Source of the DNA: Stylophora pistillata | Taxonomy: Eukaryota | Reading direction: 5' to 3' | DNA: 64,000 nucleotides | NCBI RefSeq assembly: GCF_002571385.2 | Contig: NW_019218088.1 | Coordinates: 215,218-279,217 of the forward strand | Part shown: piece by piece, positions 1 through 29,744 of the stretch | Position numbering within the stretch: the stretch's first letter is position 1 | Layout: each line of letters opens with the position of its first letter | The notes under the pieces: generated by a model | What the model was told of the DNA's origin: nothing | Seen by the model: only the letters and a program-made list of their open reading frames with translations | The model's database searches: none | Position numbers and translations under genes: made by a program

Positions 1-369
1 TGGATGTAAAAGTAATCCTCATGTGATTCCCTGTCGAATAAATATCCCGTATATACCTCATACTGTAGTTATAGTCACAATATCGAACAAGCTCGTTATT
101 CCAAGAGTACTTCCCGTCACGGATCTCCACTACACCTGTATCGCTTGAATAGGATTTACACTGGGTGAAGCCTCTTCCAAGGTCAAAGTCTTGAAATGTC
201 ACCTTCACTCTTTTGCCAGCTGGAACGGAGATCACCCAGATGCACTTGGAATCTCATGGGTATGGATATGGCTAATCAGGACTCAATATTGTACCGGAAG
301 GGCCACTGAGCGGCATGACGTAATCATTTGAGACTCCAGATGTTTTACGACATATTCCAGCGGCTTCAT
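1..369 (-). pseudogene. CUB-domain exon (type B, second CUB) of a CUB-receptor paralog; runs off the window edge
   Basis: AG acceptor at 370-371. Reads EAAGICRKTSGVSNDYVMPLSGPSGTILSPD*PYPYP*DSKCIWVISVPAGKRVKVTFQDFDLG. It has two in-frame stops where the paralogs at 4139-4567 and 25502-25927 have Y and R/S. Confidence 0.85.
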
Positions 370-1998
370 CTGTGTGGGGGTAAATTTAACATTTTCAACC
401 ACTTAATAATTAAGGTGAAATTTTTATCAAACATCATTGTATGTTAAATGTGTTCGTCACTTTATAGAAGGGCAAAGAAATATTTCAATAGTGACTTCAA
501 ATCCGAACCGCAGACTCTTGCTTCAGTTACGATCAGTTGTTGTTAGGTTTATGAAGGTTTTTTCCCCCAGTCAGTACAAGTTCGCCCTCTATAAGTTCGC
601 CCCCACCACAACGAGTTCGCAGTATCAATTACACAAAGTTTGTCACCATGCCTTTCTGATCTTTGAATATTCTCTTCAAACCTTAACATCAGTGTCCATA
701 TTCACCAATCTCTTCCCTATGCATTTTCTTTGGTGGCTTTGGTACTGATAGGGAAAATGATTGTTTCGTAATCAAAACTTTTTAGGTTGGCGATCTTTCC
801 CTATATTCTCGTGATCTTAATGGATGATTCGGCATTATTGCTGTAATGAGAAATTAAAAGCCAGTCATTCTTAGGGTCTTAAGACAAAATATGTTTCGTC
901 TGGCTCGATAGACCTGCAAAATTCTTTCTATGACTTACACGTTTGCAATTACAATCAGTTAAGTGATATGCTGGTATTTTGACTACAAGTTGTTGTAAGT
1001 CAATCGATTCCCCACCATTCCTAGGTTGATCAGTCCGGTTGGAATTTTTTTTTCAGTTGGGGAAAACATGTCCGACTGTGTGGAGGAAAGGAAGGGAGGA
1101 GGATTGGGAGGGGGGTTTCATTTGCAACATGGAAAAAACTTCAATCACACAAGTTCTAATGTCAATGTGCTTGGCATTCCATACGTTCACTGAAATTTGC
1201 ACAAATTCTGAATGAGGAATCGAATCAAACTTCTTAACATGTCACTAGTAAACTATGATTGTAAGATCATCATAATTTATAAATTTAAATCGTAGGATTT
1301 TTCTTCAGCACTTCCGGTAAAATCAGAGGGAAGTAGACTAGCCAACAGTTTTGGCTGCCTACCGGCTCTTAATGAAAGTTCTCATCCTTGCTTGTTGGTT
1401 TAACTAGAGAAGCCAGGATTTTTTCGAGGAGGGGGTGCACCACTAAAGAATGGCGTAACTGACTGGTGACCGGACGTAAACAAATTGTAATGGCGAATAC
1501 GAAGAAGGCTTTTGCCTAGGCAATAACATAATATGAACACNCCTTAACCATTTAACTCCCAAGATTGGATTCCTACTGCCTCACTTTTCCTTGTAAATAA
1601 GAAAGAAGAATTTGGTCCCATTTCAAAATACCCCCCCCCTTTCCCTTCCAGCTGATAAGCTTCTCTGTTCTGTGTTCTCATAACTTATTCGAATTACAAG
1701 GAGAATTACATGGTGATCACTTGGGTTAAGCTTTGCACCCTGACTAATCATATGATTTAGTTCAAAGAAAAGAATTTGTCATATTTCCTTTTTGTATTGT
1801 TTTACGATTAATATTTTCTAAATTATTCTGAGCCATTTTATTGTGCATTTTTTTATTCCTTTTTTTTATTCTCCATGATTCCTTCATGTTGTACTTGTAC
1901 ACTGCTGAAAGGACTGTGTACTGTATATGTCATTATATGGACAATATTGACAGAATAGAGTAAACTGTAAAAATAACTAATCGTAATGAATAAATTAC

Positions 1999-28400: not shown

Positions 28401-29744
28401 TTTTGTCGGTTTTTTCCTCCGGTTTTGTGGTTTCCCAGAGGCCCCAATGCCCCCCTCTAATAAAATGGGGGTTTTAAGAAGCCAGCACCACATACCAAGC
28501 AAGTAAGTAAATATTTGTTTGACCTTCAGGAGCTTTGTAAGTTGATTTCCTTTATTTTTGTGTCCTTTAAGTGTCAAGTATTCAAGGGTGATACTGTGCA
28601 GAGAAACAATATCTTAGTCATTCAAAGTGGTAAAAGGGTATAAAAGTTTTGTTAACTTACCTTGTCCAAAGGCAGTTTCTGAAGCCCAGGAAGCTAATAC
28701 AAGACCTATGATCAAAATTTATGTGAAAGTTGTTAATATGAGAAGAGTATCAAATTAAATTCACAATGTTTAGGAGAATTGCAAACCCTAGGTTTTAGAA
28801 TATATCAACAAAGTTGAAATGGTAAATTGGTCACCGTAACGATTACAAAAGCTGACATTTCGAGCGTTAGCCCATAGCGTCGGAGCGAATAGAGGAATTG
28901 TGGGTTGTGTGTGCTTTTAAAGGCAGAAAATGGAGCTACGTTATTGGTGGGAACATGGCAACGAGAAAAACATGAATAAATTAGTGGAATAAAAGATTGC
29001 CATATGTTGCTTCCTGGCATAGCTCCTAGGTTTTTGAGACTTGTTTAACAGAAAACCAAACAGTTTGAGGGACTACACCAGATAGGAAAATGTACTTAAC
29101 TGACCTTTTTCAACAGCTTAAATTTGGAACTATGCTCTTTAATTAGGTACAACTGCCTAGAGGGAAACATTTAAGTTTAACTAGTAACCAACTTTTCCCT
29201 CTGATTAATCCACTAATTAGCTAACTCCCCACCACCCCCATCTCTACCCATATAGAACAATAGACTTGGTTAAATCTACGTGTTACATTGGTCTTGAATG
29301 GTTTGACAAAACGAGGGTAGAAACGAGCTTTAGAGTACGTTTACAAATTAAACGAGATCTCAACTGAGGTGACGTACGTGACCAATATCAGACACAGACT
29401 TTGTAAATTCGTAAGGTTTGAATGCAAATTCGATCGATGTCACACCGAAATCAAGAACAACAAATCAAGAACCGAAAAATCAACAAATCAAGAACCGAAA
29501 TCGATGAAAAATTTAGATACCAGTATAATGCTCTCCTCTCACTACCTCGACGGGTAAAAGCTATACCTTCCTTTAAAAGTAATTCAGTGACGGAGCTGCA
29601 CCACTGATGTTCATCTTCGAGTTGTACGCACCGTAACTTAGTCCATCGTTTCACACCTAAATTTAGGAACTCCCCCAAGAAAGATCGTACAAATATAAAC
29701 ATACGAGATCTACCTAAAATGTTGAGGCCTGATCCAGGTGCCAT
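22461..29744 (-). CDS. Type I membrane protein: signal peptide + 3 CUB domains + TM + Pro/Tyr-rich cytoplasmic tail (~580 aa)
   Basis: Exons 29714-29744, 28661-28705, 27324-27698, 25502-25927, 24144-24548, 22461-22924. All introns are GT-AG phase 1 and the frame is open. N-terminus MAPGSGLNILGLVLASWASETAFGQGC; TM VFAIVFSVVFVICTCGLVCVL then KCRKTRR. The last codons are obscured by gap 22474-22493. Confidence 0.88.
23437..23937. mobile_element. MITE with ~180-bp TIRs, CA...TG ends and a 7-bp TSD (P-superfamily-like)
   Basis: CACCCGATTCGCCTTTAATCTACCG...CGGTAGATTAAAGGCGAATCGGGTG; CTCTACG at 23430-23436 and 23938-23944. Confidence 0.85.
24726..24840 (-). pseudogene. Truncated pseudo-exon (5' part of CUB-C) inside intron 4 of the intact gene
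   Basis: SATF*KKKCYIGNVNNEKLSLTGTKGT*ASPKEVSSY with the acceptor retained; 24784-24819 is identical to 18071-18106. Confidence 0.8.
26230..26648 (-). mobile_element. tRNA-derived SINE; related copy at ~38790-39110
   Basis: Head agttagctcaatggatagagcgc...gggttcgagcccc, SINE core shared with 20430-20815, and a (TAAA)-like tail. Confidence 0.75.
28801..28890 (-). mobile_element. Penelope-like element terminal fragment (minimal hammerhead-type motif, degenerate)
   Basis: Inverted copy of 30011-30093; related motifs at 5314-5352, 15776-15812 and 21381-21419. Confidence 0.55.

What the first reader, a model, noticed from the sequence alone, without database searches (positions are those of the whole stretch)
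1..29744. Diversifying birth-and-death array of 3xCUB single-pass receptors: candidate recognition locus
Seen: 3 distinct CUB-A exons, 3 CUB-B exons, 2 full and 1 truncated CUB-C exons, 2 first exons and 1 TM/tail exon. All are on the minus strand, in symmetric phase-1 modules, and 3 full-length exons carry stops. The two open CUB-A exons differ at about 50 of 125 residues (hand count) although flanking introns are still alignable. Known: tandem, fast-diverging single-pass receptors with pseudogenes typify self/non-self loci (e.g. the Ig-like Hydractinia Alr cluster), and CUB domains mediate ligand recognition. Inference: a CUB-based immune, symbiont, allo- or gamete-recognition family that pipelines would mislabel tolloid/cubilin-like, although it has no protease or EGF domains.
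Basis: partly seen in the sequence, partly recalled or inferred. Interest (0 to 1): 0.78.

Follow-up and report, generated by a model that had tools for sequence, protein, structure and literature searches.

The report
Coral CUB receptor gene plus relics
The region holds one working, expressed gene of the coral Stylophora pistillata for a membrane protein with three CUB domains, followed by decaying partial copies; the gene belongs to a coral family that databases wrongly call 'tolloid-like', and nothing found here shows it to be a fast-diversifying recognition locus.

Summary
The exon inventory is real. The window is Stylophora pistillata scaffold LSMT01000305.1. On the minus strand lies one intact gene (29744 to about 22303): two small leader exons, CUB-A, CUB-B, CUB-C and a TM/tail exon, all phase 1. 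A transcript from public RNA-seq (97.7-100% identical) confirms every splice junction. Below it lie relics: A2, B2 and B3 carry stops, C2 has lost its TM exon, and there is a second leader pair. A 797-base stretch occurs twice at 99.9% identity and both copies touch gaps, so the order of the relics is unsure.

RefSeq calls gene 1 'tolloid-like protein 1' (XP_022798319.1), although it has no astacin or EGF domain. That model also runs through a 20-N gap into pseudo-exon A2.

The family has 1-5 CUB domains, a TM helix and a proline-rich tail with conserved PPxY motifs. Among named hits it appears only in robust-clade corals (Oculina, Desmophyllum, Pocillopora, Stylophora), often in arrays.

Birth-and-death is supported. 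Diversifying selection is not. dN/dS between intact copies is 0.31-0.53, each domain significantly below 1. Variants differ by 2-9% in CUB-A, and a syntenic gene exists in Pocillopora. A recognition role is neither shown nor excluded.

The parts
29714..29755 (-). Gene 1 exon 1: short 5'UTR and 31 nt of CDS (ATG at 29744), first half of the signal peptide, donor gtagat
   Evidence: Transcript L007 positions 1-44 align here at 97.7%; sequence read
28661..28705 (-). Gene 1 exon 2: 45-nt second leader exon carrying the hydrophobic core and cleavage region of the signal peptide
   Evidence: tblastn with the leader of P0186, E 1.4e-5; transcript identity 100%; ag/gtaagt borders
27324..27698 (-). Gene 1 CUB-A exon (A1), 375 nt, open
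   Evidence: Pfam CUB 3.7e-20; transcript identity 98.9%
25502..25927 (-). Gene 1 CUB-B exon (B1), 426 nt, open
   Evidence: Pfam CUB 8.4e-21; transcript identity 99.5%
24695..24850 (-). Truncated CUB-C pseudo-exon with stops, lying in the B1-C1 intron and skipped by the transcript
24144..24548 (-). Gene 1 CUB-C exon (C1), 405 nt, open; the full Glu/Asp/Asp signature of Ca2+-binding CUBs is present
   Evidence: Pfam CUB 8.6e-26; transcript identity 99.75%; alignment to cubilin and PCPE-1; signature residues
22303..22924 (-). Gene 1 last exon: TM helix (22845-22910), proline-rich tail with PPPY (22584-22595) inside the conserved motif (22524-22622), a 20-N gap (22474-22493) that hides the stop codon, and the 3'UTR
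   Evidence: The two sides of the gap are collinear in transcript L007
21507..21881 (-). CUB-A pseudo-exon A2 (stop at 21622-21624, one Cys lost), about 420 nt below the 3'UTR of gene 1; wrongly joined to gene 1 in RefSeq XP_022798319.1
17060..17464 (-). Orphan CUB-C exon C2: open with good splice sites, but the TM-coding exon below it is missing and the Ca2+ signature is lost
15963..16173 (-). Relics of a 3'UTR of the copy that held C2
   Evidence: Matches to the 3'UTRs of transcripts L006 (90%) and L008 (75%)
13529..13559 (-). Second first exon (ATG at 13559, donor gtaagt), open
9735..9779 (-). Second copy of the 45-nt leader exon, open, ag/gtaagt borders
5438..5554 (-). 3' third of a CUB-A exon cut by gap 5557-5879; part of the 797-base stretch 4760-5556 that equals 20827-21623 (one mismatch), so it cannot be counted apart from A2
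4139..4567 (-). CUB-B pseudo-exon B2 (stop at 4179-4181)
1999..2376 (-). CUB-A exon A3: open, but lying between two B pseudo-exons
1..369 (-). CUB-B pseudo-exon B3 (stops at 272-274 and 254-256), cut by the window start

Best explanation
Shown. The window is Stylophora pistillata. It holds one intact, transcribed gene. The product (574 aa in the transcript) has a signal peptide, three CUB domains of distinct types (A, B, C), a TM helix and a disordered proline-rich tail. Downstream lie partial duplicates in decay: pseudo-exons with stops, a copy that has lost its TM exon, and extra A-B modules. So this is a small birth-and-death locus with one survivor. The gene belongs to a family with 1-5 CUB modules, a TM helix and a conserved tail. 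The modules are built from phase-1 exons of the three types. Among named hits the family is seen only in robust-clade stony corals, often in tandem arrays, and it is misnamed tolloid-, BMP1-, PCOLCE- or cubilin-like. All parts are under purifying selection, weakest in the membrane-distal A domain and strongest in the tail.

Inferred. The protein is a type I cell-surface receptor or co-receptor. The CUB ectodomain binds an extracellular protein or glycoprotein ligand. The membrane-proximal C domain of gene 1 keeps the full acidic signature of Ca2+-dependent CUBs. The nearly invariant tail motif, which holds one or two PPxY sites, recruits WW-domain proteins, most likely Nedd4-family ubiquitin ligases. 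That would couple ligand binding to ubiquitin-dependent endocytosis and sorting.
For: Identity of the window: locus L011 (GCA_002571385.2, LSMT01000305.1) is 100% identical to window 39744-11622.

Gene model: transcript L007 (protein P0232) aligns exon by exon at 97.7-100%. All borders are AG/GT and phase 1.

Domains: Pfam finds three CUBs and nothing else. The AlphaFold model shows three beta sandwiches, a helix at 431-462 and a disordered tail. The best fold matches are cubilin CUB5-8, neuropilin, PCPE-1, MASP and NETO2.

Relics: stops and missing exons.

Family and names.

Domain types are old clades, and all window copies fall in one pocilloporid clade.

Selection: dN/dS is 0.53, 0.42, 0.39 and 0.31 for A, B, C and tail between intact copies, with all intervals below 1. 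Values between species are 0.18-0.5.

Tail: the motif is conserved in 19 members from several genera. PPPY lies at 22584-22595. A search with the tail alone finds only this family.

Ca2+ signature in C1.

From the literature: PPxY-bearing small membrane proteins act as partners of Nedd4-family ligases, for example CYYR1 (PMC11399591) and PRRG1 (PMC11753899).
Against: No ligand, no expression pattern and no WW-domain interaction is known for any member, so the mechanism rests on motifs alone. In the pocilloporid clade the first PPxY has become PPxxY, leaving a single canonical site. The Glu of the Ca2+ signature is present in only 12 of 42 C-type domains, so Ca2+-dependent binding is not a family-wide trait. 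Differences between the genome and the transcript are mostly nonsynonymous (13 of 17). This fits relaxed or balancing selection as well as it fits chance. Averaged dN/dS cannot exclude a few positively selected sites.
Confidence: 0.6

Rival explanations
1. One reading: a diversifying recognition locus (immune, symbiont, allo- or gamete recognition). Tandem copies evolve fast under positive or balancing selection and supply variable CUB binding surfaces.
For: The family is lineage-specific, has variable copy number and forms tandem arrays in Oculina and Desmophyllum. Pseudogenes are present. Locus content differs between Stylophora and Pocillopora. The membrane-distal A domain evolves fastest. 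Of 17 differences between genome and transcript, 13 are nonsynonymous. An AIF-1-like EF-hand gene is the syntenic neighbour, which may be coincidence.
Against: dN/dS is significantly below 1 in every domain between intact copies. The high values in the window involve pseudo-exons. Variation within 90% clusters is 2-9% in A, far from allorecognition-type hypervariability. The paralogues are old, with dS 0.3-0.6, and their introns are not alignable. Only one working gene lies in this window. The tail is the most conserved part, which would also fit a housekeeping trafficking role.
Confidence: 0.15
2. An auxiliary subunit or co-receptor, in the manner of NETO1/2, SOL-1, LEV-10 or neuropilin. The CUB ectodomain would bind another membrane receptor or ion channel of the same cell and tune its gating, clustering or trafficking.
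For: The topology is the same: signal peptide, CUB-only or CUB-rich ectodomain, one TM helix and a short regulatory tail. NETO2 and neuropilin are among the best sequence and fold matches. Selection is purifying throughout.
Against: There is no LDLa, FA58C or MAM domain. The known auxiliary CUB proteins are conserved low-copy genes, whereas this family varies in copy and module number between genera. No orthology to NETO or neuropilin was seen, only 20-30% identity at the CUB level.
Confidence: 0.15
3. A matrix protein or protease regulator. The ectodomain would be shed and act in the extracellular or skeletal organic matrix, or as a membrane-tethered enhancer or inhibitor of BMP1/tolloid proteases, as PCPE-1/2 do.
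For: PCPE-1 CUB1-CUB2 is among the best matches. Many coral skeletal matrix proteins are membrane proteins, and CUB proteins occur in coral skeletons (PMC4890752; PMC8691061).
Against: The skeletal CUB proteins described there have a single CUB and are threonine-rich or acidic, which is a different architecture. None of the accessions of this family was found in the papers searched. A strongly conserved cytoplasmic tail argues for a function that needs the intact membrane protein.
Confidence: 0.08
4. An assembly artefact: the extra copies would be haplotigs or mis-joined contigs of a single gene.
For: Seven gaps lie in 23 kb. A 797-base stretch occurs twice at 99.9% identity, each copy abutting a gap.
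Against: Apart from that stretch the copies are only 75-89% identical in DNA, with dS 0.2-0.5, which is far beyond allelic divergence. They also carry different stops. So the artefact explains one duplicated A fragment and the uncertain order, not the existence of the paralogous exons.
Confidence: 0.04

Closest known systems
RefSeq XP_022798319.1 'tolloid-like protein 1' (Stylophora pistillata)
   Same: It is this very gene. The leader, A1, B1, C1 and TM/tail match at 97-100%, and the genomic locus is identical to the window.
   Different: The name is wrong, since there is no astacin or EGF domain. The 656-aa model reads through the 20-N gap and adds pseudo-exon A2 as a false C-terminus. The transcript gives 574 aa.
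BMP1/tolloid metalloproteases and PCPE-1/2
   Same: CUB domains of the same Pfam family; PCPE-1 is a top sequence and fold match.
   Different: There is no astacin, EGF or NTR domain, and the protein is membrane-anchored with a cytoplasmic tail.
Cubilin
   Same: A run of CUB domains. The best PDB match is cubilin CUB5-8, and the Ca2+ signature is present in C1.
   Different: Cubilin has 27 CUBs and 8 EGFs and no TM helix. This protein has 3 CUBs, a TM helix and a tail.
CUB-domain single-pass membrane proteins: NETO1/2, SOL-1, LEV-10, neuropilins, CDCP1
   Same: Type I topology with an N-terminal CUB ectodomain and a short regulatory tail. NETO2 and neuropilin appear among the matches.
   Different: No LDLa, FA58C or MAM domains. 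The tail is a PPxY tail rather than a PDZ ligand or Src-type tail. Module number varies from 1 to 5, and the family is lineage-specific and tandemly duplicated.
PPxY-tail membrane partners of Nedd4-family ligases (PRRG1-4, CYYR1, LDLRAD3, NDFIP)
   Same: A single-pass protein with a disordered proline-rich tail that carries conserved PPxY motifs. The roles of CYYR1 and PRRG1 are described in PMC11399591 and PMC11753899.
   Different: The ectodomain is made of CUBs, not Gla, Cys-rich or LDLa modules. There is no sequence homology of the tail to any Pfam family. Binding is untested.
Hydractinia Alr allorecognition cluster
   Same: Tandem single-pass receptor genes with pseudogenes.
   Different: The domains are CUB rather than Ig-like. 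No hypervariability and no sign of positive selection were found here. No link to fusion or rejection is known.

Membership tests
CUB domain superfamily (Pfam PF00431) | Sequence match to the CUB profile above the gathering score | tested here: met
   Eight exons score 36-91 bits against a cut-off of 21.4. P0232 has three CUB stretches. The model shows beta-sandwich folds.
BMP1/tolloid proteases | Astacin (PF01400) catalytic domain | tested here: not met
   No astacin hit in P0232, P0291, P0226 or P0186, and no such ORF in the locus.
BMP1/tolloid proteases | Ca-binding EGF domains between the CUBs; a secreted protein without a TM helix | tested here: not met
   No EGF hit. A TM helix is present.
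Cubilin | Eight EGF domains followed by 27 CUB domains, with no TM helix | tested here: not met
   Three CUBs plus a TM helix, 574 aa.
NETO-type auxiliary proteins | Two CUBs, an LDLa domain and a TM helix | tested here: not met
   No LDLa domain.
Ca2+-binding CUB subclass | Tyr plus a Glu/Asp/Asp acidic signature at the ligand face | tested here: inconclusive
   The signature is complete in C1. The Glu is missing in A1 and B1. Glu and the last Asp are lost in C2. Glu is present in 12 of 42 C-type domains of the family.
PPxY-tail partners of WW-domain ligases | A conserved cytoplasmic PPxY motif | tested here: met
   PPPY at 22584-22595. One or two PPxY sites, 10 residues apart, are found in most full-length family members with a complete tail.
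PPxY-tail partners of WW-domain ligases | Physical binding to WW domains and an effect on ubiquitination or trafficking | not testable with these tools
   This needs pull-down and cell assays.
Self/non-self recognition loci (Alr-like) | A tandem array with gene gain, gene loss and pseudogenes | tested here: met
   One intact gene plus relics here. Arrays in Oculina (ACROYT_G020067-79) and Desmophyllum (OS493_025848-65). Locus content differs in Pocillopora.
Self/non-self recognition loci (Alr-like) | Positive or diversifying selection on the binding domain | tested here: not met
   dN/dS for domain A is 0.53 (interval 0.32-0.90) between intact copies. Site-wise tests were not possible with the few DNA sequences in hand.
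Self/non-self recognition loci (Alr-like) | Extreme allelic polymorphism | tested here: inconclusive
   Genome versus transcript: 1% DNA difference. Variants in 90% clusters differ by 2-9% in A. The sample is small and the individuals and species are not identified.
Self/non-self recognition loci (Alr-like) | Genetic or functional link to fusion/rejection, infection or symbiosis | not testable with these tools
   No paper or supplement mentioning these genes was found.

The most novel reading that the evidence does not exclude
Robust-clade stony corals have evolved a receptor family of their own. Its ectodomains are shuffled from three CUB exon types (1-5 modules). All members are wired to one nearly invariant tail that binds WW-domain proteins. 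The family would then be a surface-recognition and uptake system for microbes, symbionts or conspecific tissue. Rapid gain and loss of copies, rather than high dN/dS, would supply the variation.
Probability: 0.15. Interest if true: 0.65.

Novelty: new variant of a known kind. Interest (0 to 1): 0.35.

Why it matters
It corrects an annotation. 'Tolloid-like', 'BMP1-like', 'PCOLCE2-like' and 'cubilin-like' entries in Stylophora, Pocillopora, Oculina and Desmophyllum are not proteases or cubilins. They are a separate family of CUB membrane proteins with a conserved PPxY tail. These names turn up in coral expression studies, where they invite wrong conclusions about BMP signalling.

The RefSeq model of this gene is also wrong at its 3' end because of a gap.

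For coral biology the family is a reasonable candidate cell-surface receptor. Its copy number is lineage-specific and its tail gives a testable trafficking hypothesis. The present evidence does not justify calling it a recognition locus.

Tried and rejected
1. The exhaustive HMMER search with exon C1 was dominated by giant multi-CUB proteins, because scores add up over domains. It served only to pick out four family members: P0133, P0164, P0186 and P0211.

2. Full-text searches returned nothing. These covered the run and sample accessions, the RefSeq accessions, and the accessions in the held supplements of the Stylophora cell atlas. So there is no expression data.

3. I checked whether these are the CUB proteins of coral skeletons. 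Those have a single CUB and are threonine-rich (Acropora) or acidic (Porites), a different architecture.

4. Look-ups of the contigs encoding P0222, P0226 and P0276 gave nothing on record. The second Stylophora locus (the 5-CUB gene XP_022781149-51) could therefore not be inspected.

5. I tried to date the duplication relative to the Stylophora/Pocillopora split. Domain trees and the A+B+C tree place the relics with the Pocillopora gene (support 85/88). The AU test does not reject a Stylophora-only duplication (p 0.18), and synonymous distances disagree between domains. This remains unresolved.

6. I asked whether the stretch 20827-22473 is a misplaced small contig. This is rejected for its upper end, because the transcript's 3'UTR runs collinearly across the 20-N gap.

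7. A TM-exon relic below C2 was looked for and not found.
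Full report
WHAT THE WINDOW IS. The sequence is eukaryotic, with 36-43% G+C, retroelement and transposase fragments and many N runs. A locus fetched through a database protein, Stylophora pistillata GCA_002571385.2 scaffold LSMT01000305.1, is 100% identical to window 39744-11622. The window is therefore a stony coral of the family Pocilloporidae, not human. 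Runs of 11 or more N cut the finding into these pieces: 1-3284, 3296-5556, 5880-11015, 11146-12552, 12564-17918, 18071-20815, and 20827 onward. A further 20-N run lies at 22474-22493.

THE OBSERVATION.
- CUB-A: A1 27324-27698 (open); A2 21507-21881 (one stop, one Cys lost); A3 1999-2376 (open).
- CUB-B: B1 25502-25927 (open); B2 4139-4567 (one stop); B3 1-369 (two stops, cut by the window start).
- CUB-C: C1 24144-24548 and C2 17060-17464 (both open); a truncated copy with stops at about 24695-24850.
- One TM/tail exon starting at 22924.
- First exons with ATG at 29744 and at 13559.

All exons have AG/GT borders, and their lengths (45, 375, 426, 405 nt) mean symmetric phase 1.

- Each first exon carries only 31 nt of CDS and is followed by a 45-nt second leader exon (28661-28705 and 9735-9779). 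Only the two together give a proper signal peptide.
- A fourth A fragment (5438-5554) is cut by gap 5557-5879.
- The 20-N run lies inside the tail exon.

One statement does not hold. The introns flanking A1 and A3 are not alignable beyond 9 and 18 nt.

THE GAPS, TESTED FIRST AS ASKED. No complete exon is interrupted by a listed gap. A transcript (below) runs collinearly across the 20-N run. Coding sequence aligns up to 22494, and the 3'UTR resumes at 22473 at 96.5% identity. About 66 transcript bases, including the stop codon, fall in the gap. I used this only to test continuity and assign no letters to the gap.

The stretch 4760-5556 equals 20827-21623 except for one base. One copy ends at a gap and the other starts at a gap. 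This looks like an unmerged overlap or a redundant piece. It could also be a very recent duplication. So A2 and the 5.5-kb A fragment cannot be counted separately, and the order of the pieces between 5880 and 20815 is unverified. The scaffold order is at least self-consistent: first exon at 13.5 kb, second leader at 9.8 kb, then A and B.

GENE 1 IS INTACT AND EXPRESSED. A contig assembled from public RNA-seq (L007, run SRR10968431, protein P0232, 574 aa) aligns to the window in six blocks at 97.7-100% identity. The blocks end exactly at the predicted junctions, and the truncated C pseudo-exon is skipped. P0232 shares a 90% cluster with RefSeq XP_022798319.1 'tolloid-like protein 1 [Stylophora pistillata]' (P0286, 656 aa). 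That model matches A1, B1, C1 and the tail. Its residues 572-656, however, are pseudo-exon A2 read up to its stop. The annotation ran through the gap that hides the real stop. Pfam finds three CUB domains and nothing else, with no astacin and no EGF. An AlphaFold model of P0232, built on 22 family sequences, shows three beta sandwiches, a TM helix at 431-462 and a disordered tail (mean pLDDT 73; about 90 in domain C). The best solved matches are cubilin CUB5-8, neuropilins, PCPE-1, MASPs and NETO2.

THE REST IS DECAY. A2, B2 and B3 carry stops. C2 is open with good splice sites, but the TM-coding exon below it is gone. An intron block and 3'UTR remnants remain at 16657-16801 and 15963-16173. 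The second leader pair is open but leads, in scaffold order, into the pseudo-exons. In this window there is thus one working gene plus the wreck of at least one more copy with extra A-B modules.

THE FAMILY. Single exons find dozens of ORF-sized hits at 45-88% identity in coral genome and metagenome contigs, several per contig. Full-length relatives have 1-5 CUBs, one TM helix and a proline-rich tail. Their names are 'tolloid-like 1/2', 'dorsal-ventral patterning tolloid-like', 'BMP1-like', 'PCOLCE2-like', 'cubilin-like' or 'hypothetical'. They occur in Oculina patagonica (locus tags G020067-79 on one chromosome), Desmophyllum pertusum (OS493_025848-65 on one contig), Pocillopora and Stylophora. 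The Desmophyllum locus and an unnamed long contig show the same exon types in runs, including two convergent A-B-C(-TM) genes. Acropora hits are distant (26-33% identity) and lack the tail.

A tree of 101 CUB domains separates A, B and C types as old clades. C is always next to the membrane. Extra modules in 4- and 5-CUB members are added C-, A- and B-type exons, which is exon shuffling allowed by the phase-1 design. A transcript from a related coral (P0186) joins the leader directly to a C-type CUB and the TM/tail.

The tail is the family's signature. Its last 40 or so residues form a nearly invariant motif with one or two PPxY sites 10 residues apart. In the window PPPY lies at 22584-22595. 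A search with the TM and tail alone finds only these CUB proteins. I found no paper that describes the family.

IS IT DIVERSIFYING? Nei-Gojobori estimates inside the window give dN/dS of 0.56-0.82 for A, 0.50-0.62 for B and 0.28 for C. Every A and B pair includes a pseudo-exon, or an exon sitting among pseudo-exons. Such lineages are expected to drift toward 1.

The clean comparison is between two intact, expressed genes: P0232 (Stylophora) and P0231 (Pocillopora, transcripts L008 and L009).
- A: 0.53 (95% interval 0.32-0.90)
- B: 0.42 (0.26-0.67)
- C: 0.39 (0.22-0.68)
- tail: 0.31 (0.16-0.59)

Comparisons with more distant corals give 0.18-0.5. Synonymous distances among the window's copies are 0.2-0.5, so the 40% protein difference between A1 and A3 reflects age, not speed. 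Within 90% clusters, which hold alleles and close species, A differs by 2-9%, B by 0-7%, C by 1-4% and the tail by 1-3%. This is a gradient, not hypervariability.

One observation remains unexplained. Genome and transcript differ at 17 coding positions and 13 of them are nonsynonymous. The number is too small to interpret.

SYNTENY AND TURNOVER. In both Stylophora and Pocillopora damicornis the CUB gene lies just downstream of a 171-aa EF-hand gene with an AIF-1-type hit. In Pocillopora the order is: EF-hand gene, a short diverged C+TM gene (164 aa), the A-B-C-TM gene P0291, then an unrelated gene. There are no relics. All window copies and the Pocillopora gene form one clade with 100/100 support. 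The relics group with the Pocillopora gene (85/88), but a Stylophora-only duplication is not rejected (AU p 0.18). Either way the locus gains and loses copies between genera while keeping one full-length gene. This is birth-and-death on a small scale.

HOW IT MOST LIKELY WORKS. Shown: a type I membrane protein with three CUB domains outside the cell and a conserved disordered PPxY tail inside, under purifying selection that is strongest in the tail. Inferred from established knowledge:
- CUB domains are protein-binding modules, often Ca2+-dependent through a Tyr/Glu/Asp/Asp site. Here that site is complete in C1 only.
- PPxY motifs are ligands of WW domains, above all those of Nedd4-family ubiquitin ligases. 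Small PPxY membrane proteins act as partners of these ligases (CYYR1, PMC11399591; PRRG1, PMC11753899).

I therefore propose a surface receptor or co-receptor whose ligand binding is coupled to ubiquitin-dependent endocytosis and sorting. The ligand is unknown. Rival readings are a recognition receptor, a NETO- or neuropilin-like auxiliary subunit, and a shed matrix or protease-regulating ectodomain. Each is listed with its test.

VERDICT. The annotation prediction is right. 'Birth-and-death' is supported. The third criterion, copies collapsing into alleles, applies to only one duplicated fragment. The family itself, CUB modules on a conserved PPxY tail and restricted so far to robust corals, appears undescribed and misnamed. 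That is a modest but useful result.

PROCEDURE. No joined spliced model of the window's exons was handed to any search or folding tool. Exons were searched singly by reference, and natural database proteins were used for whole-protein steps. Exon translations were placed side by side only in local scripts.

Noticed in passing
window 21625-22493: RefSeq model XP_022798319.1 (656 aa) reads through the 20-N gap that hides the true stop. It then adds pseudo-exon A2, up to its stop, as a false C-terminus. The transcript gives 574 aa.
   Followed up: yes
window 31447-37045 (-); L010 1058-7191: A 171-aa multi-exon EF-hand gene with an AIF-1-type Pfam hit lies directly upstream of the CUB gene in both Stylophora and Pocillopora damicornis, so the synteny is conserved.
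   Followed up: partly
L010 8612-10037 (Pocillopora damicornis): A short, diverged family member with one C-type CUB plus TM/tail (164-aa model) sits between the EF-hand gene and the full A-B-C-TM gene. Stylophora has nothing at that place.
   Followed up: partly
L006 (transcript, run SRR3144612; protein P0186): An mRNA of a related coral joins the two leader exons directly to a C-type CUB and the TM/tail (306 aa). It is either a one-CUB paralogue or an isoform that skips the phase-compatible A and B exons.
   Followed up: partly
window 22494-29744 versus L007: Genome and transcript differ at 17 coding positions, of which 13 change the amino acid. Eight of the 13 lie in the TM/tail exon. The number is too small to interpret.
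   Followed up: partly
window 23436-23600 and 23774-23938: A pair of 165-base inverted repeats (97.6% identical) lies inside the C1-TM intron; it looks like a small non-autonomous transposon.
   Followed up: no
window 28800-28889 and 30011-30094: Inverted repeats of about 90 bases (86% identical) flank exon 1 and the presumed promoter of gene 1. Weaker copies lie at 15722-15798, 5313-5350 and 21380-21417.
   Followed up: no
window 18071-18106: A 36-base fragment of a C-type exon abuts gap 17919-18070 upstream of C2. It mirrors the truncated C copy upstream of C1, so that partial duplication may predate the gene duplication.
   Followed up: no
window 7038-7295: A 21-base minisatellite of 12 copies (89% matches) that produces long spurious ORFs on both strands.
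   Followed up: no
window 8048-8740 (+) and 14379-14660 (-): A reverse-transcriptase fragment (Pfam RVT_1, 5e-16) and an ORF that looks like the end of a retroelement polymerase (no Pfam hit) lie among the relic exons.
   Followed up: partly
window 49106-49480 and 51038-51439 (+): Two ORFs with weak Pfam FGF hits covering consecutive parts of the profile; probably exons of a fibroblast growth factor gene.
   Followed up: partly
window 55912-56370 (+): An intronless 152-aa ORF with two EF-hand pairs (calmodulin or myosin light chain type).
   Followed up: partly
window 61043-62683 (-): A piggyBac-type transposase (Pfam DDE_Tnp_1_7, 1.6e-60) split into two ORFs.
   Followed up: partly
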